Assembly: GCA_963924565.1 (NCBI GenBank)
Contig: OZ004612.1
Location: 14,756,001-14,820,000, forward strand
DNA: 64,000 nucleotides
From: Ascidiella aspersa
Lineage: Eukaryota
Reading direction: 5' to 3'
The position numbers were made by a program, and so were the translations under genes. Positions 8,591 to 57,324 of the stretch are shown here, piece after piece (position 1 is the stretch's first letter; each line of letters starts with the position of its first letter). The notes under the pieces were generated by a model that ran no database searches, had not been told where the DNA came from, and saw nothing but the letters and a program-made list of their open reading frames with translations.

Positions 8591-9149
8591 ATAAGTTGTT
8601 TCATAAGACCATTAAGTAATTTTACTAAAGAGAAGCTTCTTTTTAAAATGCAAGTCGCACGAACCCAGTTTTTGACGTGCCACTTCGCACAATGAAAGTC
8701 TCACGCGCGGGACAATAAAGCGCAGCAGGCGGTGAGTCGCTTCGTCAGTTCACAAGCTGGACAAAGCAAGCGAATATGAACGAATTCTGTATGAAAGTTT
8801 ATCTGCTGCTAGATGGCAGTCGTTAGCTACAGAGAGCTAAAACGCAATATTTCAGGTTTTTGCCCCCCAAGCAAAGGCCCCTGGGGATACAGCCTCAAAA
8901 ACTTCTACAAAGCACCTTCATACCACTCTACGCCATGTCTGAAAATTTGAAGGCTCTACGATACATACTTTTTCTATAAAGCTTCGGACAAAAATTGGTC
9001 TGAAACATTTTCGGGCAAAAACAAGATATGTCCCGAAAATAAATTTTCGGCCCATATAATACTTGATCATCCCACACCCAAACACTAAACGACACCTAAC
9101 CCAAATATTGTGCGTTGCTTTAATAATGGTTTCAACGCTGTGATGGGAT

Positions 9150-11260: not shown

Positions 11261-11800
11261 GTTGTTCAGCAACATACATAGGGGAAAAAACCAGATCTGG
11301 CAGAGCATGCGGTTGAACTCCGACACGGAATTGATTGGGATAACTGTAGAATTCTAGACTGGGAACCACACTATTACAAAAGATGGTTCATTGAATTATT
11401 CCGGATTGACAAATCTCCTAACACCATGAATAAAAAGGATTCATGGTATCCGGCAATCTACTCGTCGTTGTAGCTATACGCAATAGCTGATAAACGCCCG
11501 TTGTCCGACGGCGCAGTTCTGCACCGGATGACTCCGGCGCGTCACAGCTTATCGCATACTTTAGCGACGTCTAGAATTATTAATTTTAATCTACGTTTTT
11601 CAATTTTTTACTTCTCAGTATATAAGATGGCTAACGCACTCTCGTTTTAATTATTAACCCTGATGAGGTCAGCTGGCATCTGCTGCCGAAACGTCGGTTT
11701 ATACTTCGTTTACACCAGAAGAGCAATTTATAGTTATTGATATGATGCCTGCTGGAGCTAACTCTATTTTATAATGATCCCTAATGGCCAACTAACAAAT
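11261..11800 (+). mobile_element. Penelope-like retroelement remnant: truncated GIY-YIG endonuclease C-terminus plus pseudo-LTR
   Basis: 11263-11298 encodes CSATYIGEKTRS (YIG motif). After a frameshift/deletion, 11297-11473 encodes LAEHAVELRHGIDWDNCRILDWEPHYYKRWFIELFRIDKSPNTMNKKDSWYPAIYSSL*, the typical Penelope EN tail (LAEH..H.IDW..IL..E....R...E..I...MN). It is followed by a TATA-like tatataag and a hammerhead ribozyme. The 3' boundary is approximate. Confidence 0.85.
11656..11699 (+). ncRNA. Minimal type I hammerhead ribozyme in the Penelope pseudo-LTR
   Basis: aacc-CTGATGA(11660-11666)-gg(t)cagc/tggcatct/gctgcc (stem II)-GAAA(11688-11691)-cGTC(11695)-ggtt. Stem I is aacc/ggtt; stem III is a palindromic ACGT mini-stem. 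Confidence 0.8.
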
Positions 11801-13048
11801 GCTAAGAATGCATCAACGATAAAACAACAATCAAGACATATGTCATAAATAAAATACAGGGGTTCAACTTCAAGTTGCGATCACATTTATGTGCAAATAA
11901 ACTGTGATAATAAAGATTTAAATATATTGTTTTTTTTATTTATATTATTTTACATGCCTCTTTCTTATTTTGTTGGCCTATCTCTTGTAAACCTGTAGAT
12001 TTCTTATTAACCTTTTTTAAAACATTTTCAAATAACTTTTTTACTAAAACTGTGTCCCAAAACACTTGTAAACAGCATAACCATAAAAAAACAGTCACCG
12101 TTTCGGTCTGTTCATAATCACGTTTTGTCATTTCACTCAGAATTTCATTGAACTTGCTAAAACGACTGCTAGAAAGTATGTCAATTATTACTTCAATAAA
12201 ATTTATTTTATCAGCTTTTTTGTTGCATTTTATGCTATAAATACATATAATAAAAAAATATGAGCACCACTCAGCAGGCATCTTTAGATGGCAATTTTAT
12301 ATTTCGAACCTGAAAAGAAAGGCAGAATTCGATGTTCTTTCATTTTGAGGTGCACATAAAACTTGAATAATTGGATGTCTTTGTACTTTTTGGAGACCTT
12401 GTGTATACTGTATCGAGCAACATATAGCCTATACTAACTTTTCTATTTATAAAATAGGATTGTAAAGCTGTATCTCCTTCTTTGTTTTAGACAATTTCAT
12501 TGAATAAATATAAAATTTGCTTTGCAGCTTCCAATTATGGTAAATTTAAAAATAACTTTTCGGATATTGTGATATTATGCAACCCGGTTGATATTTTCTT
12601 AAAAATAACTGCAACCAATCCGTAATTACTTCATAAGCTAGAATGGAAGCTGAATCTCTCCCGGCAGGGACACTAAACTGATGGTCGCTTCTGGTGTTGG
12701 CTTGATTAGTGGTTGTAATTCCACTTCTAGGGGAACGTTAAGCAGTTCGGCTATTACCTCACTTGTCACTGTCAGCCCAATACTTGACATGCTATATTAT
12801 ATTAAACTGACAAAATAAACATGGATATAATTAGAGAAGTTCGTGCATTAACTGAAACGCTGAATAAAATACGCGACAACAATACGCAGGTAAACAAACG
12901 ACATGAATACTCTACCTATAATTGCCGCCGAAACCCGTGTTTTTAACAAATCGTGTCAGTGTTACTCATGCGTGACGAGACCCAGTGAGCCTTCTATGAA
13001 ATTAGTATTCTATGGCGCAACTAGTGGTTGAAAATTGAGTCCAATTAA

Positions 13049-13180
13049 GGCTGGTTCCCACTAGACGCGTCTAGCGTTAACGTCAAACGTTTTTAAAAAA
13101 ACGCTTTCGGTTAGTGGCGAGGAAATTTGCCGTTAACGCTGGCAACCCGTTATGTGTGACGCGTCTAGTGTGAACCAGCC
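13049..13180. mobile_element. Short palindromic MITE, PIF/Harbinger-like
   Basis: TIRs ggctggttcccactagacgcgtc / gacgcgtctagtgtgaaccagcc. Preceded by TAA; the right target duplication is imperfect. Confidence 0.7.
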
Positions 13181-13805
13181 TTTTGCCATTTGAACACCAG
13201 TTAGTGATGGATTGGGCATCTGGTAGCCAATGTTTGTTAGTGGATGACACAGACAAACACCATATAAAACACAGCAACTAATTCAGGACATCCATGAGAT
13301 ATCAAAAGCAATTAAATAAAATACCTGATTCTACTTATGCATATAGCTGCAATTAAACCTTACTACTGCCTGCTGCTGTTACCATTATACGAAAATAAAT
13401 GCTAAGAAATGTTGTTGTCAGAACAGCGTTAACAACCATCATAGTTAAATGTACATAAAAATACATTAACTAGACCGATCAAAAAGGCCATTTCAAAGAT
13501 TTGTATATCATATAAGTTGATTTTACTTAACTTGACGTTGCCTTGTTGGAATAAAAAAAAATATTTTCTGGTGCCAGCAAAAACGAAGTATATTTCTATC
13601 AGCAGGAGCTAAAATCAAGTTATTCTGCTTTGTTAGTATTGTGTATAGTACCAAGCATACCAATACATCACTAATCCCTTAAAATTCGGTAAAACAAACA
13701 CCAAATATTGCCATAAAGACAATTTTAAGATACCTCTCCCATAAGCAGTAATGCAAAATTTACGCACTTTTGAAACCTTTCAAGATGGCGTAGAAGCCTT
13801 CTTAT

Positions 13806-14374
13806 CAGGGAGTCGAACCGTCTGACTTTTCCGGTTCAGATTCGGTTCGGGTTCAAGGATGTTTTTGGAATCCGGTTCAGTTCCGGTTTTGATTCGGAAG
13901 AATTTAAAAGTTCCGCTTCAGCTCCGGTTCAACCATTGTTATTTCAAAACCGGTTCATAAAGTTCCGGTTCAGATACAATATAATTTGCGTTAAATCTCA
14001 AAATGTGGGTGGATAAATATAGAGAATAAATCTAAGTTACGTGACTTATTAAAAAAAACAGCAACTAATTATTGAAATATCTAAAACATAAATAATCAAC
14101 AATTTTTTCATTCAATATTTATATTTTTTTCATAAAATTTCGAACATGGCGTAACTTGACTCTGTAAAGTACAAGTTGTGACGTCATACTGGAGTGAACC
14201 GCTTTTATTTCCAGGTTCGGGTTCGGTTAAGGTTCAGGTACTTTCAAATTATTCGGTTGAGTTCCGGTTCGGCTCCTAAAATCTTATAAAAAACGGTTCA
14301 GGTTCGGTTACGGTTCGGAAAAAAATTGACCCAAAACCGGTTCATAAAGTTCCGGTTCGGTTCCGGACTCCCTG
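13806..14374. mobile_element. hAT-family MITE with internal GGTTCC/GGTTCA subterminal repeats
   Basis: TIR cagggagtc(c)gaaccg / cggttccggactccctg. 8-bp target-site duplication cttcttat / cttctaat (7/8 match). Confidence 0.85.
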
Positions 14375-15089
14375 CTTCTAATTGGCTTCAAAAACCGCTC
14401 ACGCGTGCCACTAGTTGCGGTATCCAGGTTTCATAGAGATCAGTGGATCAGTGACTATTCTACGTTTTTTGTGTTTTTTTTGGGTTGCGGGTTACCACAA
14501 ATACAATGTTTGCTAAGTGTTGCATGTCACTTTATTGTTATTGCAGCTGCAAATTATGCGCCTCTGTAGAAACTAATAATTACGACCGCACAATGATTAC
14601 GGCCACCCAAACAGACCTTGTTTGTAAATATTTTGTAAAATTTGAACTGGTAAAACATATCGGTTTTGGGTATTACCGAAAAAGCAAACCCTAGTAAATC
14701 TGCCTTTTTCTTTTCTAAAGCTAATGAAAGTCGTCTACTCACTCGACGAAGGAAACACGAGACTTCTATGTAGTCAGTCTGTCAGGGTTTTTGATGCCAC
14801 TGATAGTAACTCAATCATACGTTCTTTTGTTTTATAACAACTTGCAGTGGGAACTATAATGGATTTCGAACAAATGTCAACGAAGATATGTACATTGCTT
14901 TGTAATGAATGACGTTTTGACGTTATTTATCCAACTGCATTGAAGTTAATAGGTGCGCTTAAATGTGTTCTCTCTGTATATAACGATTAGCCATGGGTCA
15001 ATTATATTAAAATATCTCCATGGTAAAATCAGTTATTTTAAAATAAGGAAGTATTGAGTTAGGTGCTAAGTTGACTTTTTGTGGCGATA

Positions 15090-18000
15090 ATGGCTGAAAT
15101 GACTGAGACTAATCTTACTTCGGGTGAAGCTATGCTGGGTGAGGAATCAACTGTCCAGCTGCTAAAGAATGGAAAAGGTGTTGAAGTTGCAGTATTGGAC
15201 AAAAGTAACAAATACAAGCAAATTGAAGCAGAAAGAAATAGTGAAACAAGAACTAAGCTGTACAAAAGGCGATTCCTAGTTCTTGGCATTTTTTGCCTCT
15301 ACTCCATGTCAAGTGCTTTTCAGTGGATTGAATATGCAATCATTACTGACATAGTGTTAAAATATTACAATAACAGCTCAGTACTAGCTGTAGCATGGAC
15401 TTCAATGATTTACATGCTTACTTATATTCCACTAATGTTTGTTGCAACATGGATGCTGGATAACTGGGGTATGCGGCGGAGTTTGCTATTCGGTGCAACC
15501 TTGAATGCAATTGGGGCTCTCATCAAAATACCCAGTGTCAACCAAGATTTTTTTTGGCTCACATTTACAGGTATCTATTGGAAACTCGTTATCAACAAAA
15601 TTACACATTTTAGCAATTGTCAGTTGTTTTACCCTTTCACACTTGTGTAAAATTAATCTAGAACATATACTAAATAGAGTTAAGCCCTATTTCCTTTTAA
15701 ATCTAAGATACTCTCAATTATTTAGCCAGTTAATACCAACATGTAATAATAATTTCTTTACATATTATACCAATGTGCTTATTAGTTATTATATTATATA
15801 TTTTTAGGTCAATCAGTTGCAGCTTGTGCTCAATCCTTTATCCTTGAAATTCCCCCAAAGATTGCTTCTTTGTGGTTCAGTGCTTCTGAAGTTTCAACTG
15901 CTACTTCTGTTGGAGTGTTTGGTAATCAGGTAACAAACTGTTGGCCAAAATTGTGATATAAGTTCAGAATGAAACAATTTTGATGCACTTATGTTAAATA
16001 ATTAATTTAGAAATAAACTGGTAGCACAGAATCAGTGGAATTATAATATATTACAAGTGAAAAAAAAAACTTTATGCAGTTAGTTGGAGCTCTTCGCTGC
16101 ATAGGCATAGCAATATAATAAGGGTGTTTTTAGCAAGTTATACCAATTTAATTATTTTGCATGGTTAGAATTGTGCAAATGTATGCAGGATTACTTAAAG
16201 CAATTACATGCCTTACTTTTTGTTTCACCATTTTGCATTAAGTTGTGTATGTTTTAATTGTGTAAAATTGGTGCATTGTATTCTTAAGCTACACATTTAT
16301 GTTATATATGATTAAAGCACATAATAGCAATTTTGTATAAACAACTGTGCCATTAGGGAATGTGGTGTTAAGTCTCTCTTGTGAATAGTATTGCCTACTT
16401 TATAAACCAAATATTTTTCTAGATGTCAACAGATAACAATGTATAATTAATCCATTTTTTAAATAAACAACAGGCTTAATTTGCATGTTAATTCTAGTTA
16501 TAAATACCATTAAACAAACTCTATATATTGAATTATTTAGACATGGATTTCATTTTTTAACATGAAGTTCAAGCCAAATTGGCCCAATTTGTTGTATTTA
16601 TAGTAACTTAAGTAAGAAATTTCACTATTTACAGATTGGACAGAATTAACTGCAGAATACTACCAACCCAATTTTTTTTTTAAATAAATTCACACCAATT
16701 AATTAGATTTGCTTAAGTTTTCAGACCGCTTCTAAATGCACCAGCAATAAAAAACTGCCCACAATCTAAACAAGGTTGTAATTTACAACATTTCCTCAAA
16801 TACTAGATGTTTCCATTAACACAGTGACCAAAAGTGCCGTATTAGTATTACCAAGTAAGATCTATCTTAACGATTAAAAAATTGGAGCAAATGGGTATAA
16901 AAAAAGGCACTAAAAAAACAGGGTTTTATATTTTTTTTAAAGAATTCTATATCTCCATAAAAAAGCCTTAATATACAATTACATATACATAAATTAAAGT
17001 AGCGAAATATCCATGTGCTTTTATTTTTGTTCAATAAATTCTTTAATTCCTATGTACAATAATAATGTTTTGTGATTGCATTTAATCAAACGCTTAAAAA
17101 GAACCTGTAAGTGTTAATGTAAACCGTTAGCTTCCCGTGACCTTAAATAGTTTAATATCCATCAAATGTTTTACTATTTTACTGGCATTGTGAATTTAAG
17201 AGACTTTTAACTTGTTGGCTTAGAGGCGCACCTATATCTGCATGCATTAAACAGAGACCTGGTTAATGCCGTTGGTGTTATTTTGAAGACCCTGTGTGGC
17301 CAGGCCAGTTTCAGGAAATGTTAGCTATCAAAAAATATTCACCTTGCCACCACACTAATAACCTCTATGCAGAAGGTCAGTGAAGGTTCTGTCCTTCAGT
17401 AAAGCTTAATTGCCACACTGGTCAATTTAGTTATACCACAGACAGTCTGCCAAGATAAAACGAATTCTTTACCTCATGGCTTAGTCATATGTTAGCATTA
17501 ACCACCTAAGGCACATCTGAGATAAGTAGACTACTTGTTCAATTATACTACGTTTGTCAAAAAAGTCCACTGAAACATGAAGATAATTTGATTAAAATGA
17601 TCTGTTGCACTTACAAAAACGCAGTTACAAAAACTGTTAACTTAATATTAAAAAAAAAACATATCCTCTAGAGAAAATCCAATTTTTTAACAGTTAGGTA
17701 ATTCTGCAGAATAAATTTAAACACACAAAATAAGAACAAGACTGGTATAATCCTAGCTATTTAAACATACTTAACAGACTATTTATTTTTACATGCAAAG
17801 GTTTGTATAGTTGTAAAGAAAATTTGTGTTATGTAAAATCAACCAAAAAAATACTAATGTTACACACTTATTTTTCCTTATTTTAAAAGCAAAAACATCT
17901 AATGTTGTTCGACAAACATGTCTCTACCAGTCACCTTTAAATTATGTTTTTATTCTTTACATGTTTGCTGGCAGTTGGGTGTCGCTCTCGGTTTCCTTAT

Positions 18001-21000
18001 ACCTCCGATGATCGTTCCAAACTCAGATGACATGGAGGAGATTGCGACCGGGTTCCGGATCCTTTTCATCTCCTCCGCCACCGCTTGTACCATCGTGGTC
18101 TTCCTCATATTTTTCTGTAAGTCCCTATTTATGTTTCGAGTCCAAATGTACGTCCCTTTGCCAGTTTGATGTCAGACCGCGCAAACTACAGAACAATGTT
18201 TACGTCAGAACCAGAACGTAATTATTTAACTTCCATTGACGTCTAGTACAATTCATCTTTATTTAATGTATTTCTTTGTTATTATTCCTTTCGGTTGTTT
18301 TGCGCAGTAGATCGATTAAACCTATGGTTACGCAGCAAAATCTTTTTAACGACGTCATATTAATACTAAGCCTTTAACTTTTTACAGTTTTATTTCACAG
18401 AAATTTGCTTTTATTAAGGTTTGCGTTAAGTGTTTTGCGTTTTCTAAAATTGGGAAATAAATAAACTTTTCACTGGCTGTTATAACACTTTAGTTGTATT
18501 TCGAAGTAATTAAAAAGTACAATAAACATTTATGTTTCTGCGGACGTAGGAGCTAAAAGCATTATAATATTATATGTACGGATTTATTTTCGGCACAAAT
18601 TGTGTTTAAATGGAATCGTATCCGTGTTCACAATTTCTTGCGTCTAAATATTTTCTTAATAACTCCTCGTGCATGTAGACTGTATAGTATCTGTGAACTG
18701 TCGACATGCATTGCACAACTATAAATCTTGAGTAAAATTTAAATCGTCAATGCGTCGTTAAGTTTTACCGCACTTCGGATTGGTGTGTTTGCCTTTCCCC
18801 TTTACGAGATGTCCTTTGTCCGACTAGTTTACGAGTGCTCTAATTTTTTTGCTACTGAATTGGATAGCTTGGCGTGTTTTCTTTGCAGACTAGTGCTGTT
18901 CGGCCCACGAGTTGTCTTGATAATCTTTTTTAATGGGAAATTAAATATATTTGGGAAAAAGTACCCGCCTTTACAACTCCCCTTTCTTGACAAACGTTAT
19001 GTTGTTCCTTACTACTGTTTAATAATTAGATGAATGATATATAACAGCCTAATAAGATTTCACCGAATTGCAACTGGGGTGTATACTTTGCCAAACAAGA
19101 TGACTCCTATGCTGTAAAATTAGGTTACAAATATTTTTTTCAGTTTTTTTTATACTTTCTCACCGAAATATGGTGCCTTTTGCCGAAACCCTTATTTAAC
19201 TACAGCTGAAAACAATATATCGATCTTTGAAACGTATTTAGCCATGAGACTATAAAAATATTTTTTGTTCAAATTACATTTGCACAAAGTCTTTTTTTTG
19301 TTTGACGCCTTTATAATTGTATTCATGCAATGTGCTACACACATTTTATCCCTGCAGCCACGATTGTAGTTTTAGCGGTGCATTTTTGTGAATGATTGCA
19401 ACAATATGCCTTTCGTGGAAAGTTATTTCCACCGCCCCATTATAGGATCGTAAACAAAACTTATTCGAAAATCACGCGTCATCCAACACGATTTATGCAT
19501 TAGCGTTGCTTGTCACACTGGCTCTCGTCAACCTCTTGTCAGATTGGCTCTTTTCAATCTCTCATGCTTTAGGCTATTAATCCATTAATCGATCGCCATT
19601 ATTGCTGCCTGCAACAGTTGACATACTAACACCTAAAAAGCTTTGTTTGCCAAGTCGGTGTATAAAAAGCTCGGGTAAAATTGGCTCTATCGATATGTTT
19701 AAATATTATTTCAAACTCCGTTATGTTCAGTCATCCGCGACCGGCCTCCTGTGCCCCCCAGCATGGCTTGTGCTGCCGCCCTGGTGGCCGAAGATGAAAA
19801 CAAGGCCGGGCAGGTTTCTTCGCTAAGCAACTACAGGCGTTCGATCGGAGTGCTCCTGAGAAATGTTCCGTTTCTTCTTCTTTTGATCACATACGGTAAA
19901 AGCAAGCTAGTATTTTGTTGTAGCTTATAGATATATTAAATATCTTTTTTTATTACGCATATCCTTTATGCCTATGGTTCTACGGTCGAGTTGGCTATTC
20001 GTATATTGCAATGTATATAATTTGTCTGTTTAGTTTTGATACTGGTTCATTCGTGTATAACACATTCAGCTAAAAATCTTGTTTAAATCCATTCTAAATT
20101 TGTATACCAACAATGTATACTTACAATCTCATCGGGAATATTCTTAAAATATATTTCCTTTTATAACGTATGTATCAAGGCAACATCTTCTTGTATGAAA
20201 CCATTTTTCATATTTACGGTGTTCCCCATGCTTTATCGCAATTCCTTATCGTTTGTTATGTTACCGGACTCGCAATTTATTCATTAAGAAACCCTAGCCA
20301 ATATCCGGATTAGACAGCGAGGGCTATTTTGAGCCGTGCATTTACAGGGAGTGGGTATTGTGTTTTGTTCAATGGTTTTCTATATCCCTCTCGTCATTAT
20401 GCATTTTATCATACAAACAGGTTTTGGTTTGTAACCGCTTACGGCAATTCAGCTAAATACATTTTGGGTTTTAAATATACTAAAAATTGCGGTTAGTCAA
20501 AGAATAAAAGTACGATGCAATAAAAATGCATCGTTGAAAACTTGTGATAAAGTGATTTACGTCCATTTTCTTCAGTACGCAGAAAAACCCACATCAAAGC
20601 AAAAACTTTGTCCCGAATGGCACAGGTTGTCAAATCACTGGCTGTTAGTCAAATGAATTGAGTATCCAGGTAGACTTGTTCATTGAAGTTTTACTTTGCT
20701 AAACTGGACTTTCGAATTACTCAAAAAATTGAATTGCCTTATTAGAACGTAGTGGCAATAAACATTATCAAAACTTTCGTTTACAATTTACTGCAAATTG
20801 ATATACCGATTTGCATCCGATCAAAATTTTATTATAGACTCTAAAACAATTGCTTTATATATACTAATTGGTTTCGCCTTATAACAGTAGCAAACATGTT
20901 TAATAATAATATTTACCGCCTGTTTATAGTGTCAATTATTCACCCTCTCTAGTTTGTTTGGCAATGAATTAAAAGGCGCGCAGCCAAAGACAATCAGTTA

Positions 21001-39537: not shown

Positions 39538-42275
39538 CTCTTATTTAAAATTTTTCAAATCTTCTTCGAATTTATAGAATTTTTAGCCCATTTCGAGGGA
39601 AAATTTGTATCCTAATGCACCTTTTAATATTTTCACCTTGTTTATCAGTACTGTGTGAATTAATAGTCAGATTTCTAAAATTTTAAGCTCTGCCAAATTA
39701 TCTGCTTGGTGTTTTTTTGTATTTGCGCCCTATACCAATTTTCAAAATATGGCCATTTCGTGAGTATAACCTCAAACTTCAAAATGGGTTAACGCAATAT
39801 AATATTTTTGCGTTTTGTGCGAGCTTTAAAGTCATTTTAGTGCACGCATTCAGCTGTGGGGTCAATAGTCCTAATACTTTGATGTCAAGTCTTCTTTTAA
39901 AGTAAACGATTTGCCTACTGCAAATCAATTAAACGCAATTTGTTTTTGTGTTCAGCGCACTTTTCTTAAGTTGCATTGTATGTTGCAACAGTTCGTTCAA
40001 GAGCAGGTTGCGTCTTAAGATTACTTGAATTGTGACGTCAGGTTATGTGGTAACTTCTGGCGTTTTCTTTTATTTTTATGCCCCCTCCCTAAACAAAACC
40101 TGGATCAACTATCAATGCAGCGATGTTTACTGTCTTATGTTTTCAAACTCTTGTTTTGACAAGCGTTGTTTGGAGTAGTTTTCTAAGGAAAAATAAATAG
40201 GCACAAACGAAGAACTATATAAGTTTCGATATGCGCTTGCAGCAATATCGCTGCACTTAAAAAGGTAACGTCAGATGCACGAAACAACTCTGGCAGGAAT
40301 GCAACCTTAACCCCGAGTTCCTAGGAACCTGCTCGTGCGTTAAAAAATTATCTTTCCCTCCCTGTACCTCGAATTCAAACTGTTGGCTGACACAGTGTAG
40401 CTACTTTAAAGTGCTCCAAAATGTAACATGTATCATGGTGAATGGGAATTGGGGATGGTAGCATGTATTTTCGTCGGGACGATTTTTAATTTGCATTAGG
40501 TTTTCATTAATAACCTACAGAATTTTAAGTAAGAAATCCTAATCCAACGTATAGCTAATAATGTTTTATGCGTCGAATACATTATTGTTTAATTCATAGA
40601 CGATTGGACGTCCCATCGGTGATAGTTTCCAAATGATTCATCAGAATAACATGGGTTTCACAAATATGACTTGTTGCTTTCGAAACTTAAATGTAGCACT
40701 GATTCAAATTCCTAAATATCCATTTCATTAATATTTTAAAACCGCTAACAAGTTTGTGATTTGTAATCAAAACGTTTCGTTTTGGATCTTTTGTTAATCA
40801 ATACTGCGCTTTAGTGGTGCGTTTATTGTTCATGTTACATTTTCTCTAGAGTTTTACTTTTGTTTTGTTCAAGTAGCCAAGCTGCAAATTGGGCAATTTC
40901 AAAATGGACAATTGATTGAGTGACATTTCCAAGCCCCCATTGCGTTTCCAATTGATCCAAACGATCAAAAGCACATCAAACTCAAATTACGGAGAAACGT
41001 TGCGGTTGTGTCGCTCGTGTCCTCATAAAACACTTCCTACTTAGTTCTGAATTTTATCGTTCAATGATTTTGTTGAAACGTGTATTTTCCACTTGCAATG
41101 GCCACTTTTATTTGGCTTCTATAATAGTAGATTATAATTTTGCAATACCTGAAAACCTGTGTTGGAATAAACTAAGAGGTTGTTGCCGCTGTCTAAACGT
41201 TCAAAACTTCTTTTAGCATTTTAAGTTGTTAAATTTACCACCATAGTCGCATAGGTTTGGGGTTTTTATGGAAATTAATCATCACGACTGTATAGGTAGA
41301 AAGAAGGGCCAGCGCAATATTACACACTTTAATCTCCGTATATGTAATTATTTTGCCTAACCATTGGAAAGACGTCAATGAGGTTAAAGCTTAGCGTTTA
41401 GAAAGCAAACTCCTGTAGTTGTTAAATTGGTGGTGCTCTACAATATTGTGCAACGTGTTGTAACGAACATACTGGCATGGGTTATGGTTTTGGTATGGAA
41501 AGTGACACCACCTGCCTCAATGTTCACCGAAAACATAGTGACATTTTCTGCTGTCCTGGCGCTTTTGTTTCAACCATTAGATGCCTAGGCACATGAAGTT
41601 CGTATTTAATGTACTTGTAAAAGTGATCGCCAAATGCTGTGCGCTACAATGTTGTTAAACTGCATCATTTAACCCGGCTATTCTAACTGTAATCTGCAAC
41701 GGAAATTACTTAGCTAACTCACTTGGCTGTTGGATGACGTAGATCGGTTTTCTTTGGGCAGGACTGGCTTTTATGCACCACTGGCAAGGTGCACCAGATT
41801 TTTAAATCTAAAATCTTGAAGTTTAGAAATGCTTACATCTGCCGTTCTTAAACTTCAGGGGGTGCCCCTTGACTTGATTAATCCAAACTCGCTCTACAAC
41901 ACTTTACTGTGTATAGTAACTAATCTCCCATATATCGAAAATTAAAAGTAATATCACTGAGCGAAATAGATTAAGTGATTGGAATAAAATAGTGTTGTTA
42001 GTCACGTCTAAATTCGTGTTAGCAAATCTGAATATTAAAGAAATGAAAAGAAAGTCTTTTTGAGATTTCTCTTAACCCTTTACGGGCGCCCGGAGTTTAA
42101 GAATCCCTGGTATAATAATTCCCTTACTATGTTGTAAAGAACCATTATTGCCTTTGTTTTATTGTTTTTTGCTTATCTTTGTATAACAACTACATAACAT
42201 TTTTAGTGATTTAAAATTTGCTGATCAGAAGCACTGAAGCAATCACAGCACAACGGTCATATACCAGTGGGAAAA

Positions 42276-45200
42276 ATGTACGCATCATTGCTTTTGACGT
42301 TGTTGTTAGCTGGCACATCTATACCACTGTGTGAATGTAAAGGTACGTATAGTTTGAAAGGTAACTTTTAGTAATCCAAGAATATGGGTACGGTTGATCG
42401 ATTCCATGCAAAAACAGCAATATTATATGGAGGTTGGTTAGTAAACTTATACAACCATCAATGTTCCGTAAAGTTTTGCTGCATAATATTGACTGTTGCG
42501 ATTTAGGTGTTTAACAAACACGGCGCGGTATGGATATTTAGATTTCTATGCTTAATGTGTACCGATTGGATCCGTGATCCAATGTCCGAGATATTGTTTG
42601 CTTTACTTAAAGGCTATAGGTACATCCGCTTTGCACGATTCTTTTCTTATAAGATTAAACATTTAGGTGACTTTGGCGTATATAATAAGTCCACCCCAAA
42701 AGGCTAGTTCTTAAACGCCAGTGTTCAAAGTGGGCATGTTTTTTTCTGCCATGCGTTCGCTATATCACGGCGTTTTGAATATATATGAACTATAAGCGAC
42801 ATGATTTGTTCGTTTTCGTATTTAGCTGGTTACTTTTCAATACCTCGACAACACAGCCTAGCGGCGATTTTGTTCGATGCAGCAGCAACACTGTCAAATA
42901 AATTTAGTATAGCTGCGTTGTTACGCCCTTAGTTTATAAAAGTATGTACTATCTATACAACTCCCTAAGACTAAGTTTATCGGATAGGTCAATAACAGCA
43001 ACTTTACGTGCTATTGTTTTTTTTTTCGTTTTGGAATTTGCCCAATTCAATGCAGTCTGATTGTTATATCTAAGACACCAAGCAAACTAATAGAGTCGTT
43101 GATCGCGGCTTTTGTTGCAGATTATTTTATCGTGGCGACAAACCTTACTGTTACGTCACGCGATCTTATCCAGACTCTACATTGGGACACGTCGCTTCCC
43201 AAAGAAGAATGGAACTTCACAGTGTTTCAATCGTAGGAGAAAAATATTTACGGAGAAAAGTTTATTTAATGTTGGCTGTTATTTCAGTTACAGAATAAAC
43301 TCACCTCTGAAGTCTAAATATTAGAAAAAATAATGATGTTTTCAGAGCATAATGTTTGAAGGTTGTAGTAAGACGTAATAAGAAAATCAAAGCCCATACA
43401 GAAGTATTATTTTGAACGTTTCGAATAACTCTTTATTCATTTTCAGCATCATGTCTTTGTTATGTTTGCCATATTCCAGCTTATTTATCATTAACATCGC
43501 CACAGGGATAATTACTTTTCACCAAACTGGACTGCAACAAGGGAATGCACGGGAATAGCGGCGACGCAATGTACGTTTCATCAGCGTTTCGAAGCCAGCG
43601 ACGTCTTGCATTTTCACGTGGCGCGTGTTGGAGACACACCTGTTCAATCAAATGATGAGTATTCGTTCAACCAGGACAACGTCACCGTGTTTCAAATCAT
43701 TTATCAAATCGACGGTGTGTGCTTATATCATTATCTATTTGATAATTACAACAAACAAACTATTTTGCGAAAAGTAATTTCAATTTGAAGCGCTGCAAAA
43801 CCGAAATCGAACCATTGATTAACTCACAGATTACCAAGAAACGAGCGAAGGCGGGATTTTCACGTTTTCTTCGCCGAAATTTAGCGTCAAGCGAACTGAC
43901 GGTCTTCTCCAGCTCGGCTTTCGTCCCGTCCGGGCGCCCTGGTGGAACGGAACCACACTGGCAGAGCGGGTTGAGCAAGAACTCATCCACGATTTCAACT
44001 ACCGAATCCTGTACTATGGCTGCGACAGCTCCGAAATGGAAAGGGGCGAGTGCCCTGGCAATACAACCCGGGTAAGATTGGTGAGCATTATGCCTCAAAT
44101 AAAATAACAAAACTGGGTATAATTCGCATTACCGACACCATATGTTGCAAATTTTACCGACGCAGTACGGTGGGTTGGAACCCATGATCGACTAGCGTGT
44201 CCTTACAGCGATTTGTTGTTGCATATTATTTTACTTTTATAATCAAAAACACGGCTAAAAAAACTTTTACCGACGCAGTACGGTGGGTTGGAACCCATGA
44301 TCGACTAGCGTGTCCTTACAGCGATTTGTTGTTGCATATTATTTTACTTTTATAATCAAAAACACGGCTAAAAAAACATCTACAGCTTCCAAACTGTTAA
44401 GATTGCAGTGAAATATGTTACGTTAAATTTGATGGGTAAAATGGTTGCGAGACAATACGTTGGACTAAAATATGAACGGTATCATTCTTCCTTTGTAACT
44501 ATATTTACACACCTTTATACAATTTAAACCTATTAAAGCGTGAAACCGCAAAGCGCTAAAGCAACCTGAGATAAATATTATGCGTGAAACATGTTTTGCA
44601 GAAGGAATCTCGGGTGATTGCGGCGACGAGTTTAAACTATTCGCTCCACTCAACCGAACCGAATGTCGAGTATCTGTGCGTCGAGGTGCAGCGAGAGATG
44701 GATGACGCTTTCCAGAAGATAAGCAGCAAATTTACAAAGGTAGCTTTATGATTTAACAGCGATTTTCGCACAACAATGAACTATTGTTGCTGAATTCAAT
44801 CAGCCATTCAAACATAATAAAAGCTTCATTTTTATAATTTTTTTTATTTTTAGTTTTTGGTTTGTCATTCATAAATTTTGTATTCCAACACTTAAACTTT
44901 GTGTTTTAATTGGCAACAAAAATGTCTTACACGCCTTTCTGGCAATTCCGTGATTGTATATGCCAGGGATGTGTATTTTTTTAACTAGGCGGGCCACATA
45001 TGCCTGTAAAACGTAGATCAAGAGCCAAATGCATTTCTCCTCGAACAAATGTACTATAACTGAAACGCTGGACACTAAAGAGCATTCTGTTAGCTACAAC
45101 ATATTAATCAAAATTAGTACTGCTATTCCTCAATTCGACAAAGCTTGATAAACTGTATGTGTGATGAACCTGTCTTATTTAATGGGTCAAAAAACAACTA

Positions 45201-48200
45201 GTTAAGAGTATTCGTTTGGCTGGTCGAAGACTCAAACCTGTCAGGTGACACATATATTTTCGCTCTGCTGGCCGCAGGTTGCTCACTGTTGCGTAAATAA
45301 GCGAATTTAACATCCAATAACACCTGGGGAGTGATAAGGTTTAGTATATTACATTATGTTTCGGATCCACAAAGTTCATGTGCTCACACTGTCTTACTTG
45401 TAAAAAAAAAAATAACCTCCATTATACAAGCAGTGTTTTAATATCAATATAAAAATCGCTTAGTGAAATATGGCGCTCAAATATTAAACTGTAAATTTAT
45501 GCAAAATATGTTTGATATATGTGACATTCGTTTGGTGATGTAATCATGTAAATCAGTGGTCGGCAAACTATGGGCCGCGGCCCGAATGTGGGCTGCAGAG
45601 CAATTTTTAGTGGGCCGCGAGTTACTTTTGAATAGCTTAGCGTTATCACGTAGTTGTGGGCCGCGCGATAGCCCTACATTCATTGCACTGAATTTGAAAA
45701 GTTGGTGTGGCTAGAATTTATATATTGTCTCAGCGTGGTTCAGACGCACGTCCCAAATGTGGTCGTGAGAGCCCGTCGAACTATATTTTCGGCCAACTTT
45801 AATTATATGTAAACGTAAAATTTTTCGCGCATCGCGCGTATATTCTTGGTTTTATAGTATGTTTTACATTATGGCATGGCAGTGTTTTGGGCATCAAGGC
45901 ACCGTGTATTATTTCATTTTAAAAACAAATATCCTGCATCCGCCACTGTTTTCGTTGTGGTTAAACGTGGTGGGCCTTCAATAGCTTCGAAACGAGTGCT
46001 TTGGGCCACCACAAAAAAGTTTACCGACCACTGATGTAAATGGACGTCTATATAGCGCGTTAAAGTTGTTTGTTATGTTACAATTATAAAATGTATTCAG
46101 ATAAGTTGCAGACCAATAACTGTAAGAAATTAAAAAATACATTAGATGAATATTTTGAGGTAAAAAAGTACAATATATGGAGTTAGCCTCTCATATTTTT
46201 GGATAGCACCATTTAAAATTTCTGGTTTAAGGTCGATTCATAATAAAAAAAAATTCTACATTGTCTTCAGTCTCAACCGCTTCAGAAAAATACTAATCTT
46301 AAAAAATTCTCGATCGAACCAGTGTTAAAATAAGTATTTGAGTTCGTACGGCGAAACATACAATATATTTACATATAGCGTAAACGACATGTTTGGGCTG
46401 ACTTTCGCGTTTAAAAACTCGCGTTTATAAAATAAAAATTTGGCAAAAAACATAGCTTGGGGGAAATAGCCTAGTGCCCCACTCTGAGGAGAAAGAATTA
46501 AGTGATTGGAGTAAACAGTGTCGGTCACAGTAAAATGTAGTTTTAAAAAATATATTGGTGTTTTCAAAAATTGATACTAAATATACATTAAAAAGTTTTT
46601 TTAAAAAGTTTTTTTAATGTGTCCTTCGTGCACACTTTACGCTCCGGAGTTTGAGAACCCCTAAACTACGTTTGTTGCAAAACCATTCACAGAGGCTTCT
46701 TCAACCAGATAAAATATACAGTAAATTTATTTTCTGCTTAATGATTTGTAAAGGGGTAAAGTTGGAGTGTATGACAAATGTCAACGCACAATTTTTAACG
46801 TACTCAACTTTTTATATATGGCACACAAGGTATCAGGTGGTAACAGTATAACGACTAAATAACATTAAAGCGAAATGGTAAGTTTGGTTGGATCAAGTTT
46901 GGATAGTATTGCCATTTTGTCGGATTATAAACCTTTCTCGTTAAAAGTTGACATTAAATGTCGGACATCTTTAGGGATACAATTGTAGGAAATGTATTGG
47001 TTATAGTGTGAAATGTGCAATATTTTGTTTTAAAAACATTATTATGGCTAAAAACGAGGCATGCCTTGCATTTTTGGAATAAATTTAGGATTTTAAACTA
47101 TTTTATCTTACTATTGAAGTAAATCTATAATAATTCCTTTTAGAGACACTTCAATACATTAATCATTGCGTTTATGATGGTTTATTAACAAAAAATAATG
47201 ATAGATAACGCGAAATGTACATTATCCAATTCCTCAGCAGACATTCACTCTTCAGGAATTGTGTCCAATCTGAAATAATATATTGCCTAGAAACAAACTG
47301 AAAGTTAATATTGTTGTTGTGCTTACTAGGTGACATTAACTCTTTCCCGTTTTACAGCACTGTGTTCAAAAGAAGCCGCAGATTGTAAAATTCGTGTAAG
47401 TTTTCCCTTTATACTATTTTCTTACGGTTTATTATACTTAAAGTTACACAATATATAACATAATTGGCAACAAAATTAATGTGTGAAAAATTTTTAGATT
47501 GTTTTACTAGGTTGCCTATACATTACAGTACCTGCTGTAGCAATTGCCATTGGTCGACAATAAGGCTTGATATCTCTAGCTGAGCTTTGTCGATTTGTTC
47601 ACGCGCTGTCGTTTTCAAGAACAGTATGAGTATCAAAATCCACTCTAATAATACTGAATTTGAAAACAACAGCACGTGAGGTAGTGTCATCTAATTTTTA
47701 CAGCTTGTTCTCTTTCTTGTGTTTAAAATTGAAACTTTTACGGAAACATATAACAATTCCATGCTAGATCTCATGTTTAGTTATATTTTTTAACGTTAAT
47801 TTTTGCCCTATGAAGCGATTTTAATAAATTGCCTTACTTCATCGGCCAACAGACTCACGACAACTGACAGGCTAAACCAACTCCTGTGCACTTTAAACGC
47901 GGCACTGGGCTCGTGCTGCCTTAAATCAGGCAACATACGCCGAATACGTTTCGCTATACCGTGAAGCATTTGTCCTTTGTACTCCGTGAAACGAGGCGGA
48001 AAAGAAGAATTGAGGTCGCCGAATTTCGCAAAATTTTGACGGAAGTCCTTCCTGCTTTCAGTCTCGTATGGCACGTGGTTACGCTCTAAACTCGTTTTGT
48101 AGTATGCGGTCTATTTTCTTAACTGTAACTCTATGTGCCCGAGGTAATTTACGATTGTAGACAAGTGCTAAGCAAAATAAATAATTGGTGAACATTGCCG

Positions 48201-50223
48201 TATTAAACGCTAAATTTTAGAAGACCACTACTGTCGACCGTATTGGATTCGCCATGGTGGTACACATATTTACACCGATACTAATTAGCTTGTTTCTCAT
48301 AGTGTTTACTACGTATATAGAAAATTTATGATACAGTTTGCGGGTTTGGGTATCCAAAACAGTTTATTCGGTAAAGTTTCTGTAAAAGGGAGGTATCAGA
48401 ACGACATATTTAAGATTAGTTAAACTGACGAAGAGCAATGGTGGTGTTTTGAATAAAATATTTGCCAAACTTTTAAACTTTATATACCTATTTTAAACTT
48501 GCATTATCGGAATGAGGTTCTAATAATGCAATTAATATACATATGTTCTTTTCGTTTAAATTACGAACAACTCTTTTCGACCATGAGCATAGAAATTCTT
48601 TTGTCGTTTCTGTTTGACGAACCTTTAAACTTGCCAAAACTGATGCTAGGCAAGCATTTTTTTAACACACACACACATATATATATATATTTGGTCATAA
48701 CAGGCCTATAATTTTAAAAGTAGTCTATAACAAGCGTGATACGTACACCGTTTTATGGTAGACACTGGAATTTTATTTGCAATTTATACTCAAAAGTATA
48801 TTTACATCATTCAGTAATCGAAAAGACGATATGTTGAACTGTCATAGAATAACCGATTAACCTAGTAAATTTGTATAGCTGTTATTGTTTTGTATTTTAA
48901 TCTAAAATCGCAAAACTATGCTCTTTGGTGTCAATGCAAAATACGAATATGAATGGTCTTGTAATATGTTGCCACAGCTTTTAAATAAGGTACAGGTTTG
49001 TTTTTCAGGCCGTACATCGCAATTCTGTGCGTTTTCTCGTTGGGATTTGTGGTCGCAGTCACCGTATACTGTCACATACACGGAAAGCACATCCTTTACA
49101 GCGCCTTAAAACTACGAAGCATTGAAATACCGAATTCTGTGGTAAGTAATTTGCAATGATGCGCCAATAAGGTTCTTGCATCGTATCGTTTGGTATTACA
49201 ACCCAACCTTTTAAAATACGTATGTCTATACGTGAAAGGTACATCATTAATATATAGAAACGGACCAGCGCTACCGAGACGGGTAGATTTTAGCTATATT
49301 TTAGTCATTTAGTTCTGTAGGGGCATAAGGCAATAAAAAACGGTCCAATACTTAATATATTTCTCTCATCTCGCTGGTAAACAGAAAACGTTTGAACAAA
49401 AATCCCGCATATCATTTTTAAGAAAAGCTGCGGATGATGATATTTCTTTGACCGGGAATTTCAACGAAAATTGGTTACGATAAAGAACTCTTAATAAAAT
49501 GTATTTTGACTATCGGCATAGTGACTACCATTCGTAACTATTATAAAAATATAAAATCCCAACCTGCTAATACTTGTTTTGTGTTATGAGTTTTTCATGA
49601 AATTAATATTCTGACTGTGGTTTAACGCCGAGCAAATGTAACATATGCGAGAGCTAATCCTTTTCCCACATATTGACTCGCCCTTCAACATTTACCAGGA
49701 CCAAGTGCTCCAGGCGAGTCCCTCAATCAGCTATCATCAAACGCGTTTAACTGACATTAACGAGAAAGAAATCGTCGATCCGTTACCGATCCGGGATGGA
49801 TCCTTCTCGCGTCTTCTTTCGGTTAGCTCCTCGGCGGACCACGAGTGGAGAGCTTGGAAGGTAGACGAGAACGTTGACGAAGAAGAAGATATTCCGCCAT
49901 ATTCCGATATGCTCGTTCTCGGGAAGAGCCCTTCATCGAAGGACAACATCGAATACACCGAAGTGCTGCGTTCCGAAATGGATGACGGGTCATCAAGCGT
50001 TGGCTACATGACTTTGGCCCAGCGTCTGTCGGCCGAAATCAGCCCGAGCCTGAACGCGTGCGGCACCGGTTTGGCAGGGCCTCGCGCTTTTCGCGATTGC
50101 AATCTTGACGACAAGGTTGAATTTGTCCAACATGAACAGCACGTTTGCAACGAGGACTGCGGCTACGCTTCCAAGGACGCGACGCACATCTTCTGCCCTC
50201 GCAACGTCGCTAGGTTCGTTTAG
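42276..50223 (+). CDS. Class II helical cytokine receptor (interferon/IL-10 receptor/tissue factor family), ~487 aa, 8 coding exons
   Basis: Exons: 42276-42342 (signal peptide MYASLLLTLLLAGTSIPLCEC); 43121-43232 (ATNLTVTSRDLIQTLHWD...NFTVFQ); 43506-43714 (WTATRECTGIAATQCTF...HVARVG); 43830-44071 (FSSPKFSV...LQLGF...DFNYRILYY); 44602-44739 (EPNVEYLCVEVQ); 47358-47395 (HCVQ); 49009-49141 (TM YIAILCVFSLGFVVAVTVY, Box1-like IPNSV); 49699-50223 (Tyr-motif tail). Total 1464 nt, open frame. Intron phases 1-2-1-0 across the two FN3 subdomains match the D200 pattern. No in-frame WSXWS. Confidence 0.82.
44152..44377. repeat. Perfect tandem duplication, 2 x 113 bp, in the receptor intron
   Basis: ttttaccgacgcagtacggtggg...cacggctaaaaaaac at 44152-44264 and 44265-44377, identical. 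Confidence 0.9.
45554..46033. mobile_element. hAT-family MITE
   Basis: TIR cagtggtcggcaaact / agtttaccgaccactg (15/16). Perfect 8-bp TSD atgtaaat at 45546-45553 and 46034-46041. Confidence 0.92.
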
Positions 50224-56523: not shown

Positions 56524-57324
56524 ATGGAGTTTGACACTGACATATTTTGCCAAGAAAGGGATATTATTCTCAAGATACGAGAACTCAACACTCACATTGT
56601 CTGTGGACTATGCGCTGGATATTTCATCGATGCAACAACAATTTCTGAATGTTCACATACATTTTGCAAGAGTTGTATTGTTAAGCACCTACAAACAAAA
56701 AAATCCTGCCCGGAATGTGGGCAAAAAATTCACGAAACTCAACCACTCCTTAATCTTCGAAGCGATCGTGTTATGCAGGATGTAGTTTATAAACTGGTGC
56801 CAAATCTTTTTCAAAATGAACAGCAAAGAGAATCTGATTTCTGTCGAGTTCGAGGCACAGACTTTGCTTTGAGCCGTAGTCATTTGCTAAATATTGGAAC
56901 TCCACTGAAATATACCCAGCAGAAAGTGCTGAAAGATTTTGTTGATCTCATGATACCTACCTTGGATGCTCAGAAAGTACCGAATCTTCATGAGGCACAT
57001 CTATATTCACATGATGAAAAAATCACATTTAGATTGTGTGCAAAAAAAGAAAAACAAGATCAAATAAACAATCGAGATGATTACAAACTTAAAACTGGCA
57101 AAGAAAAGTTTGTTCGTTGTCCAATTCGGGCTACAGTATATCATTTACTTTGCGTTTTAAAAAAAATTCTGCATAATGATAACAAGCAGCATATAATCAC
57201 TCTTACCTGTTGTGGTGTTTTGCTTTTTGAATCATGTACCATAAAACATGTACTTCTTTTGAATTGGTATAGTTCAGATAAGTATTCTGAAGATATTCCT
57301 TTAATCGAATATGAAATTAGCTAG
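56524..57324 (+). CDS. PCGF1: Polycomb group RING finger protein 1 (PRC1.1 subunit), intronless, 266 aa
   Basis: C3HC4 RING KIRELNTHIVCGLCAGYFIDATTISECSHTFCKSCIVKHL...CPEC...KIHETQPLLNLRSDRVMQDVVYKLVP, closely matching PCGF1 (IHETQPLLNLKLDRVMQDIVYKLVP). C-terminal RAWUL-like segment KFVRCPIRATVYHL. Confidence 0.92.
   Translation: MEFDTDIFCQERDIILKIRELNTHIVCGLCAGYFIDATTISECSHTFCKSCIVKHLQTKKSCPECGQKIHETQPLLNLRSDRVMQDVVYKLVPNLFQNEQQRESDFCRVRGTDFALSRSHLLNIGTPLKYTQQKVLKDFVDLMIPTLDAQKVPNLHEAHLYSHDEKITFRLCAKKEKQDQINNRDDYKLKTGKEKFVRCPIRATVYHLLCVLKKILHNDNKQHIITLTCCGVLLFESCTIKHVLLLNWYSSDKYSEDIPLIEYEIS

What the first reader, a model, noticed from the sequence alone, without database searches (positions are those of the whole stretch)
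42276..50223. Complete interferon/IL-10-type (class II) cytokine receptor in an apparent invertebrate
Seen: signal peptide, two FN3 subdomains with class II hallmarks (NLT..S......L.W; W.....C..I..T.C; P.F.V; Y.I.YY; P....CV.V....C), the D200 intron phases, a TM helix, and a Box1-like IPNSV|DQVL split by a phase-0 intron (cf. IFNAR1 PSSIDEYF, IL10RA LPSVL), followed by a ~200-aa tail. Known: interferon and IL-10 family ligands are characterised from vertebrates, and class II-like receptors in invertebrate chordates are poorly characterised orphans. Inference: a long-chain JAK-coupled receptor implying an unidentified pre-vertebrate helical cytokine.
Basis: partly seen in the sequence, partly recalled or inferred. 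Interest (0 to 1): 0.8.

Follow-up and report, generated by a model that had tools for sequence, protein, structure and literature searches.

The report
Sea-squirt interferon-type cytokine receptor gene
This is an apparently intact eight-exon sea-squirt gene for a membrane receptor of the interferon/IL-10 (class II cytokine) receptor family; such receptors were already noted in sea squirts, so it is a new, very divergent member of a known kind whose ligand is still unknown.

Summary
Window 42276-50223 (+) carries eight open exons with GT-AG borders. They encode a signal peptide, two FN3-like halves, one transmembrane helix and a tail of about 197 aa (487 aa in all). I searched it exon by exon only; the joined step was left out.

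Evidence for class II membership:
- The only database relative is a 481-aa Phallusia mammillata protein (CAB3262930.1, "LOC100185317"). It is colinear with the exons and is the reciprocal best match.
- That protein passes Pfam's Tissue_fac cut-off and resembles IL-22R, IFNAR1 and tissue factor by features and predicted fold.
- The window's own exons give only weak class II signals (Tissue_fac E=0.087; IFNAR1 E=0.5), but they hit no generic fn3 model.
- Intron phases are 1-2-1-0-0-2-0, against the canonical 1-2-1-0-1-0.
- A Box1-like PNSVDQ sits where class II receptors have PxxLxF.

JAK and STAT genes exist in this genome, and at least two more Tissue_fac-type receptor genes lie elsewhere. RNA reads gave no junction support. 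JAK coupling and a helical ligand remain inference.

A Ciona class II receptor has been reported since 2005, and this scan already noted four such genes on other DNA of this genome. It is a new member of a known kind.

The parts
42276..42342 (+). Exon 1: ATG and signal peptide (MYASLLLTLLLAGTSIPLCECK), ends in phase 1
   Evidence: Open frame and GT donor. It has a hydrophobic core. There is no upstream in-frame ATG in the open segment that starts at 42225. No homology support, since signal peptides diverge.
43121..43232 (+). Exon 2: first half of FN3 domain D1 (NLT..S......L.W), ends in phase 2
   Evidence: Its only Pfam hit is Tissue_fac, E=0.087, 13.1 bits, profile positions 25-55. It aligns to P0002 residues 38-56 at 53% identity.
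43506..43714 (+). Exon 3: second half of D1, with W-x5-C-x7-C (43528-43572), ends in phase 1
   Evidence: The top three PDB sequence hits are all IFNAR1 (E 0.5-0.75), aligned on this motif in both IFNAR1 repeats. It aligns to P0002 residues 74-138. The same motif aligns with a paralogue exon that passes Tissue_fac.
43830..44071 (+). Exon 4: first half of D2 (PKFSV; RAPWWNG at 43931-43951; YRILYY; extra C-x9-C loop), ends in phase 0
   Evidence: Of 1.84 billion representative proteins, the only credible match is P0002 (E=1.1e-4, 38% identity). Pairwise E=1e-13. P0002's only match in this genome is this exon.
44602..44739 (+). Exon 5: second half of D2 with the first Cys of the D2 pair (44677-44679), ends in phase 0
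   Evidence: Open frame. Weak colinear match to P0002 residues 225-257, with the Cys aligned.
47358..47395 (+). Exon 6: 38-nt mini-exon (HCVQKKPQIVKF + 2 nt) with the second D2 Cys (47361-47363), ends in phase 2
   Evidence: AG/GTAAGT borders. This exon is needed for the frame. It also makes the stretch between ..TK and the TM helix 13 residues long, the same as in P0002, with the Cys conserved (reading). It has no direct RNA support.
49009..49141 (+). Exon 7: transmembrane helix (49010-49072), basic stop-transfer stretch and the start of a Box1-like motif (P at 49130-49132), ends in phase 0
   Evidence: Aligns to P0002 residues 271-311 at 32% identity, E=9e-7. LK(L/I)R.IE.P is conserved.
49699..50223 (+). 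Exon 8: cytoplasmic tail of 174 aa and stop. Conserved motifs: DPLPI (49777-49791), VGYMTL (49999-50016), QHVCNEDCGYASKD (50137-50178)
   Evidence: Single open frame. Aligns to P0002 residues 415-470, E=1e-8. The global alignment shows the shared motifs.

Best explanation
[quoted passage not shown] It is the counterpart, in this sea squirt, of the Phallusia protein CAB3262930.1, which is named after Ciona LOC100185317.

Shown here: the exon structure, the topology (signal peptide, a D1-D2 'D200' ectodomain with the class II cysteine pattern, one TM helix, a tail of about 197 aa), and the family link through the orthologue.

Inferred: the D1-D2 elbow binds a secreted helical ligand. The chain pairs with a second class II chain; at least two more such genes exist in this genome. 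The juxtamembrane P-x-x-V/L motif holds the animal's JAK. JAK then phosphorylates the conserved tail tyrosines (I-E-Y-T-E-V, V-G-Y-M-T-L, C-G-Y), which would recruit STAT or SHP-type SH2 proteins.
For: Gene model:
- Frames and splice sites.
- Exon G+C 0.499 against intron 0.346.
- Colinear alignment of E2-E5, E7 and E8 to P0002; E6 fits by equal length and a conserved Cys (reading), and E1 does not align.
- Reciprocal best match; single copy in this genome.

Family:
- P0002 scores 35.1 bits on Tissue_fac, above the 27-bit cut-off.
- Its best PDB sequence hits are IL-22RA1.
- Its Atlas look-alikes are IL-22RA2 clusters (0.90, 178 shared features). Its Atlas model aligns over residues 33-265 with IFNAR1, tissue factor and IFNGR1-type clusters at TM 0.66-0.69.
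- Window E2 hits only Tissue_fac, E3 hits only IFNAR1, and no exon hits fn3. Generic FN3 exons of the same genome hit fn3 at 38-49 bits.
- Phases 1-2-1-0 and the final 0 match the canonical 1-2-1-0-1-0 (PMC8863823; bioRxiv 10.64898/2026.05.30.728932).

Signalling context:
- A JAK-type FERM_F1 domain and three STAT_bind loci are in the genome.
- PNSVDQ lies at the position of the class II Box1 PxxLxF (PMC5394478). The orthologue has PRPLDE, and the C7 paralogue has PEKLVS.
- Tail motifs are conserved between two distant ascidians.
Against: - The window's own exons are each below any curated threshold. The class II call therefore leans on an orthologue that is only 24-53% identical over the aligned parts.
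- No Interfer-bind (D2) hit for the window exons or for P0002.
- The fifth canonical intron (phase 1) is replaced by two introns (phases 0 and 2).
- Box1 has Val where vertebrate class II receptors invariably have Leu, and Gln where Phe is favoured.
- There is no YxxQ STAT3-type site.
- About 6% of one RNA-seq run gave about three reads on E3/E4 and no junction.
- No class II cytokine is known in tunicates: a Foldseek screen of Styela clava found none (preprint), and the Pfam IL10 search here was blank, which is uninformative.
Confidence: 0.8

Rival explanations
1. It is a class II-fold receptor that does not work as a JAK-coupled helical-cytokine receptor. Instead it could be a tissue-factor-like cofactor, an adhesion or co-receptor molecule, or an inhibitory or decoy chain that acts through its ITIM-like V-x-Y-x-x-L motifs.
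For: - Box1 departs from PxxLxF at two of the three key positions (reading against PMC5394478).
- I-E-Y-T-E-V and V-G-Y-M-T-L fit the ITIM pattern and are conserved in P0002.
- No ligand family was found (preprint 10.64898/2026.05.30.728932).
- Tissue factor shows that the fold can serve another function (PMC1963337).
Against: - The tail is long (about 197 aa) and carries a conserved juxtamembrane Pro motif, followed about 30 residues later by a conserved (D/E)PLP(I/V) stretch. That is the layout of Box1 and Box2.
- JAK and STAT genes are present.
- By my recollection, tissue factor's tail is about 20 aa.
Confidence: 0.13
2. The spliced model is wrong or the gene is silent. It could be an unexpressed or decaying copy, or its exons (above all E1 and the 38-nt E6) could be joined differently.
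For: - No junction reads and only trace coverage in the one RNA run.
- No predicted protein of this genome was found in the protein libraries.
- E1 and E6 have no alignment score of their own.
Against: - All eight exons are open with canonical borders, and the phases fit.
- The exon/intron G+C contrast is strong.
- The junctions E2/E3, E5/E6/E7 and E7/E8 give gap-free, equal-length alignment to P0002 across the joins (reading).
- Cysteines, sequons and tail motifs are kept.
- Only 6% of one run, from an unknown tissue, was read.
Confidence: 0.05
3. It is a class I cytokine receptor or a generic FN3 membrane protein that resembles class II receptors only by chance.
For: - Class I clusters (IL-21R, IL-4R, CRLF2) appear lower in the Atlas list at 0.84-0.86.
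- The window exons alone are sub-threshold.
Against: - There is no WSXWS motif and no class I CX9-10CXW pattern (definition in PMC1963337; translations).
- No fn3 hit.
- The orthologue passes Tissue_fac.
- The first four intron phases are the class II ones.
Confidence: 0.02

Closest known systems
Phallusia mammillata CAB3262930.1 / UniRef A0A6F9DIS8 ('uncharacterized protein LOC100185317', named after a Ciona gene), and the 'apparent class II cytokine receptor' of Ciona intestinalis (GI 198428337; Krause & Pestka 2005, as cited in PMC3210801)
   Same: - Similar length (481 against 487 aa) and the same order of parts.
- NL.(V/I)T...L..TL.W, W-x5-C-x7-C, R.PWWNG and the (I/V)(L/M)YY-x-C loop.
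- D2 Cys pair, TM helix, LK.R.IE.P...D..L.
- (D/E)PLP(I/V), SSV.YMTL..RLS and QHVC...CGY..KD.
- Reciprocal best match.
   Different: Only 24-53% identical over the aligned parts. Box1 has Leu in Phallusia but Val here. I could not fetch the Ciona protein, so its identity with the published GI number is not tested.
Vertebrate long-chain class II receptors (IL-22RA1, IL-10R1, IFNLR1, IFNAR1)
   Same: - Tissue_fac-type D1 with the W..C..(I/V)..T.C motif.
- Two-domain D200 ectodomain.
- Intron phases 1-2-1-0...0.
- A single TM helix.
- A Pro-based Box1 about 20 residues after the membrane, and a long tail bearing tyrosines.
   Different: - No significant sequence match for D2.
- An extra mini-exon, with phases 0 and 2 in place of phase 1.
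- Box1 is P-x-x-V-x-Q, not PxxLxF.
- No YxxQ site.
- An extra C-x9-C loop in D2.
- Ligand unknown.
Tissue factor (F3)
   Same: The same Pfam family for D1, and a predicted-fold match of the orthologue over both domains (TM 0.69/0.65).
   Different: By my recollection, tissue factor has a very short tail and no Box1. Here the tail is about 197 aa with conserved motifs.
Lamprey CRFBs, and the lancelet receptors reported as cognate to lancelet IFN-like ligands (bioRxiv 10.64898/2026.05.30.728932)
   Same: Class II receptors from outside the jawed vertebrates: signal peptide, a Tissue_fac domain plus a second FN3 domain, and a TM helix. The preprint reports the 1-2-1-0-1 phase array for the lamprey CRFBs.
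   Different: Ligands are reported for those receptors. For tunicates, the same study's fold screen (Styela clava) found no IFN-like ligand. No sequences were at hand to compare.

Membership tests
[quoted passage not shown] | N-terminal FN3 domain of the Pfam Tissue_fac type (PF01108), scored on the window's own exons | tested here: inconclusive
   E2 scores 13.1 bits (E=0.087, cut-off 27) and this is its only hit. E3 has no Pfam Tissue_fac hit. The exons could not be joined, so a whole-domain score was not obtained.
[quoted passage not shown] | The same Tissue_fac domain in the closest relative (orthologue P0002) | tested here: met
   35.1 bits, E=1.2e-8, residues 30-109 against profile positions 16-94. 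Orthology rests on the reciprocal best match and colinearity.
[quoted passage not shown] | Class II cysteine pattern: a D1 pair in W..C..(I/V)..T.C and a D2 pair about 20-25 residues apart | tested here: met
   D1 has W-x5-C-x7-C at 43528-43572, aligned to both IFNAR1 repeats and to a paralogue. The D2 cysteines at 44677 and 47361 are 22 residues apart, and both are conserved in P0002.
[quoted passage not shown] | Absence of the class I hallmarks (WSXWS; CX9-10CXW...) | tested here: met
   E5 and E6 contain no Trp, and no such pattern occurs in any exon translation. The definition is taken from PMC1963337.
[quoted passage not shown] | Intron phase array 1-2-1-0-1-0 | tested here: inconclusive
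   The observed array is 1-2-1-0-0-2-0. The first four phases and the last match. The phase-1 intron before the TM exon is replaced by a phase-0 intron, a 38-nt exon and a phase-2 intron. The C7 paralogue shows 1-2-1 at the same places. The canon is taken from PMC8863823.
[quoted passage not shown] | Second FN3 domain recognisable as the class II D2 (Pfam Interfer-bind or IFNGR1_D2) | tested here: inconclusive
   No Pfam hit for E4 or E5, or for P0002's D2. However, the Atlas model of P0002 aligns across residues 33-265, covering both domains, with class II clusters at TM 0.66-0.69. Interfer-bind itself proved unspecific in this genome: most of its hits score higher on fn3.
[quoted passage not shown] | Juxtamembrane Box1 PxxLxF (Pro and Leu invariant in vertebrate members) | tested here: inconclusive
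   The window has P-N-S-V-D-Q: the Pro is kept, Leu becomes Val and Phe becomes Gln. The orthologue has P-R-P-L-D-E. The motif definition is from PMC5394478.
[quoted passage not shown] | Binds a class II helical cytokine and signals through JAK/STAT | not testable with these tools
   Only the presence of JAK (FERM_F1, 32.4 bits) and STAT_bind loci in the genome could be shown. No IL10-family match was found (uninformative).

The most novel reading that the evidence does not exclude
Sea squirts keep a working multi-chain class II cytokine system: this gene as a ligand-binding long chain, plus at least two other Tissue_fac-type chains, one JAK and several STATs. Its helical ligand would be so diverged that fold screens have missed it. 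If so, an interferon/IL-10-like signalling axis exists in tunicates, where it is currently thought to be absent.
Probability: 0.3. Interest if true: 0.6.

Novelty: new member of a known kind. Interest (0 to 1): 0.3.

Why it matters
Class II receptors carry interferon and IL-10-family signals in vertebrates, and where that system began is still debated. A 2026 preprint places IFN-like ligands in lancelets and lampreys but finds none in a tunicate.

This gene adds one more well-defined, apparently intact tunicate receptor, with tail motifs conserved between two distant ascidians. Together with the other class II-type genes in the same genome, it gives concrete bait for a ligand hunt.

By itself it does not change the picture. 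Receptors of this kind were already noted in Ciona in 2005, and this scan has reported four others in this genome.

Tried and rejected
1. Everything was done exon by exon. In one search the exons were concatenated in memory only to count G+C; nothing joined was translated, printed, saved or searched.
2. The search for homologous proteins with P0002 (whole protein, ectodomain, residues 140-210) found only P0002 itself. One search was a parameter slip. No Ciona or vertebrate sequences could be brought in, so there is no phylogeny and no useful MSA.
3. AlphaFold2 of P0002 without an alignment failed (mean pLDDT 37.5). I therefore ran no fold search and relied on the Atlas's own model.
4. MAFFT of P0002 with exon fragments scattered the fragments (A1 and A2). 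These alignments were not used as profiles.
I did not retype those letters and used coordinate references instead.
7. PDB sequence searches of E2, E4 and E5 gave nothing meaningful.
8. The Pfam Interfer-bind scan of the genome mostly picked up generic FN3 exons, so it is not a usable marker here.
9. The Pfam IL10 scan of the genome was blank, and blank in all controls too, so it says nothing.
10. RNA: about 6% of one RNA-seq run was laid on 42200-48199. Coverage was trace-level and no junctions appeared. Most reads fell on a high-copy intronic repeat.
Full report
**What is there.** On the + strand between 42276 and 50223 lie eight open exons with canonical AG/GT borders.

| Exon | Coordinates | Phase at its 3' end |
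|---|---|---|
| E1 | 42276-42342 | 1 |
| E2 | 43121-43232 | 2 |
| E3 | 43506-43714 | 1 |
| E4 | 43830-44071 | 0 |
| E5 | 44602-44739 | 0 |
| E6 | 47358-47395 | 2 |
| E7 | 49009-49141 | 0 |
| E8 | 49699-50223 | stop |

Together they make 1464 nt, or 487 codons. Every search used single exons or a database protein. The one exception is, where the exons were concatenated in memory only to count G+C.

The exon translations give:
- a signal peptide (E1);
- two FN3-like halves each for D1 (E2, E3) and D2 (E4, E5, plus the mini-exon E6);
- a transmembrane helix, PYIAILCVFSLGFVVAVTVYC (E7);
- a cytoplasmic part of 23 + 174 residues (E7, E8).

The only slip is the compressed D2 cysteine pattern: the partner Cys sits 22 residues downstream, in E6.

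Three independent signs say these are real coding exons:
- Exon G+C is 0.499 against 0.346 in the introns.
- There are seven N-x-S/T sequons in the ectodomain exons and none in the tail (reading).
- E2-E5, E7 and E8 are colinear with a tunicate protein (below); E6 fits by equal length and a conserved Cys, and E1 does not align.

**Organism.** Earlier notes of this scan call the genome a sea squirt. My own evidence agrees. The only credible relative found in 1.84 billion representative proteins is from the ascidian Phallusia mammillata. At 24-53% identity over the aligned parts, the window's species is not a close relative of Phallusia.

**Relatives.**
- phmmer with E4 against the representative library gave three hits. 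Two are low-complexity or repeat proteins. The third is P0002 (481 aa, CAB3262930.1 / A0A6F9DIS8, 'uncharacterized protein LOC100185317', Phallusia mammillata).
- The window exons align to P0002 in order: E2 to 38-56, E3 to 74-138, E4 to 145-198, E5 to 225-257, E7 to 271-311, E8 to 415-470.
- Across the E2/E3, E5/E6/E7 and E7/E8 joins, the two proteins have equal spacing. That supports those junctions (reading).
- P0002's only match in this genome is window E4. E3 and E4 have no second copy in the genome. The relation is therefore reciprocal-best and single-copy.

**Class II, class I or generic FN3?**
- P0002 passes Pfam's curated cut-off for Tissue_fac, the D1 domain of class II receptors (35.1 bits against 27, E=1.2e-8).
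- Its best PDB sequence hits are three IL-22RA1 chains (E 0.12-0.41).
- In the ESM Atlas its ectodomain's nearest clusters by features are IL-22RA2 (0.90, 178 of 256 features). Class I clusters follow at 0.84-0.86.
- The Atlas's own model of P0002 aligns over residues 33-265 with IFNAR1, tissue factor and IFNGR1-type clusters at TM 0.66-0.69.
- The window's own exons are weak when taken one by one. E2 hits only Tissue_fac (E=0.087). E3's three best PDB hits are all IFNAR1, aligned on W-x5-C-x7-C in both IFNAR1 repeats (E 0.5-0.75). E4 and E5 hit nothing.
- None of the window exons hits the generic fn3 model. As a control, generic FN3 exons of this genome hit fn3 at 38-49 bits.
- There is no WSXWS motif and no class I cysteine pattern (definition in PMC1963337).

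**Gene structure.** The canonical class II array is 1-2-1-0-1-0 (PMC8863823). The 2026 preprint gives 1-2-1-0-1 for the ectodomain of lamprey CRFBs. Here the array is 1-2-1-0-0-2-0. The first four phases and the last agree. The phase-1 intron before the TM exon is replaced by a phase-0 intron, a 38-nt exon and a phase-2 intron. A paralogue on contig C7 shows 1-2-1 at the matching places.

**Cytoplasmic part.**
- Vertebrate class II receptors bind JAK1 through the Box1 motif PxxLxF. Pro and Leu are invariant and Phe is favoured (PMC5394478).
- The window has P-N-S-V-D-Q, starting 20 residues after the helix. Phallusia has P-R-P-L-D-E. The C7 paralogue has P-E-K-L-V-S.
- So the Pro and an aliphatic residue are kept, Leu is Val here, and Phe is lost.
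- About 30 residues further on, both ascidians share (D/E)PLP(I/V). This could be Box2-like.
- The tails also share I/V-x-Y-x-x-V/I, SSV.YMTL..RLS and QHVC...CGY..KD. The two V/I-x-Y-x-x-L/V sites fit the ITIM pattern. There is no YxxQ.
- The genome has a JAK-type FERM_F1 domain in a 1118-aa open frame and three STAT_bind loci. This fits the single JAK and two STATs described for Ciona (PMC3296744, PMC3670263).
- Coupling of this tail to JAK is inference.

**Possible partner chains.** Scanning the whole genome with Tissue_fac gave two further loci over the cut-off, each confirmed by Pfam at 29 and 28.7 bits.
- One lies on C7, about 10.3127-10.3184 Mb, minus strand. It has D1, D2, a TM helix, a KLPEKL motif and a 465-aa open tail.
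- The other lies on C1, about 16.2465-16.2486 Mb, minus strand. It has D1b, D2, a TM helix and an open tail segment of 201 aa.

The window gene is only distantly related to both: the W..C..C motif aligns and little else. The scan's notes list four class II-type genes on other DNA of this genome. I cannot tell whether they include these two.

**Expression.** One RNA-seq run of the species was available. About 6% of it was laid on 42200-48199. Roughly three reads fell on E3/E4, in the orientation expected for a + strand RNA in a dUTP-type library. Similar trace coverage fell on introns, and no junctions were seen. Most reads mapped to a high-copy repeat in intron 2. This neither supports nor refutes the splicing.

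[quoted passage not shown] A June 2026 preprint (10.64898/2026.05.30.728932) reports IFN-like ligands in lancelet and lamprey and a receptor pair for the lamprey IFN; its significance statement also claims cognate receptors in lancelet. Its fold screen of Styela clava found no IFN-like secreted protein.

The gene is thus a new, very divergent member of a known kind. The ligand question for tunicates stays open.

**Verdict.**
- Observation: confirmed.
- Class II assignment: supported, mainly through the orthologue.
- JAK coupling and a helical ligand: plausible inference.
- Novelty: low to moderate.

**Steps that could not be run.**
- Three protein searches found only P0002.
- AlphaFold of P0002 alone failed.

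Noticed in passing
G000:C7 about 10312700-10318450, minus strand (L018 735-6432): A second class II-type receptor gene. Its D1a exon passes Tissue_fac (29 bits). Its D1b has W..VPSC...GC and FRVRA. It has a TM helix followed by KLPEKL, and a 465-aa open tail. Phases 1-2-1 were read at the first three introns.
   Followed up: partly
G000:C1 about 16246500-16248650, minus strand (L019 4003-6131): A third class II-type receptor gene. Its D1b exon passes Tissue_fac (28.7 bits). D2b and the TM helix sit in one open segment, and the open tail segment is 201 aa.
   Followed up: partly
window 43345-43449 (intron 2): A very high-copy short repeat. DNA word depth is about 1.4-1.9e5 against about 50 elsewhere. 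It attracts nearly all RNA reads laid on the stretch.
   Followed up: no
window 44149-44374 (intron 4): A perfect tandem duplication of a 113-nt unit (100% and 99% identity).
   Followed up: yes
window 45545-46042 (intron 5): A MITE-like element with 25-nt terminal inverted repeats (88% complementary, 448 nt apart). DNA depth is 6,600-21,000, so it is multi-copy.
   Followed up: partly
G000:C5:19588620-19588829 (L020): A JAK-type FERM_F1 domain lies in a 1118-aa uninterrupted open frame. This suggests a JAK gene with few or no introns.
   Followed up: no
G000:C6:13891943-13894559 and 14008685-14010287: Two STAT_bind loci lie on the same contig as this receptor, 0.8-0.9 Mb away. A third is on C5.
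   Followed up: no
window 56524-57324 (+) and 15081-15650 (+): The neighbours are a 266-aa RING-finger ORF (a C3HC4-like CxxC...CxHxFCxxC pattern, Polycomb-group-like by eye) and an ORF with multiple hydrophobic spans that looks like a transporter. No cytokine-like gene was seen next to the receptor.
   Followed up: no
window 42333: The DNA run's contig reads A where the window has G. That would change Glu to Lys at codon 20, near the predicted signal-peptide cleavage site. No other exonic difference was listed in 42200-48199.
   Followed up: no
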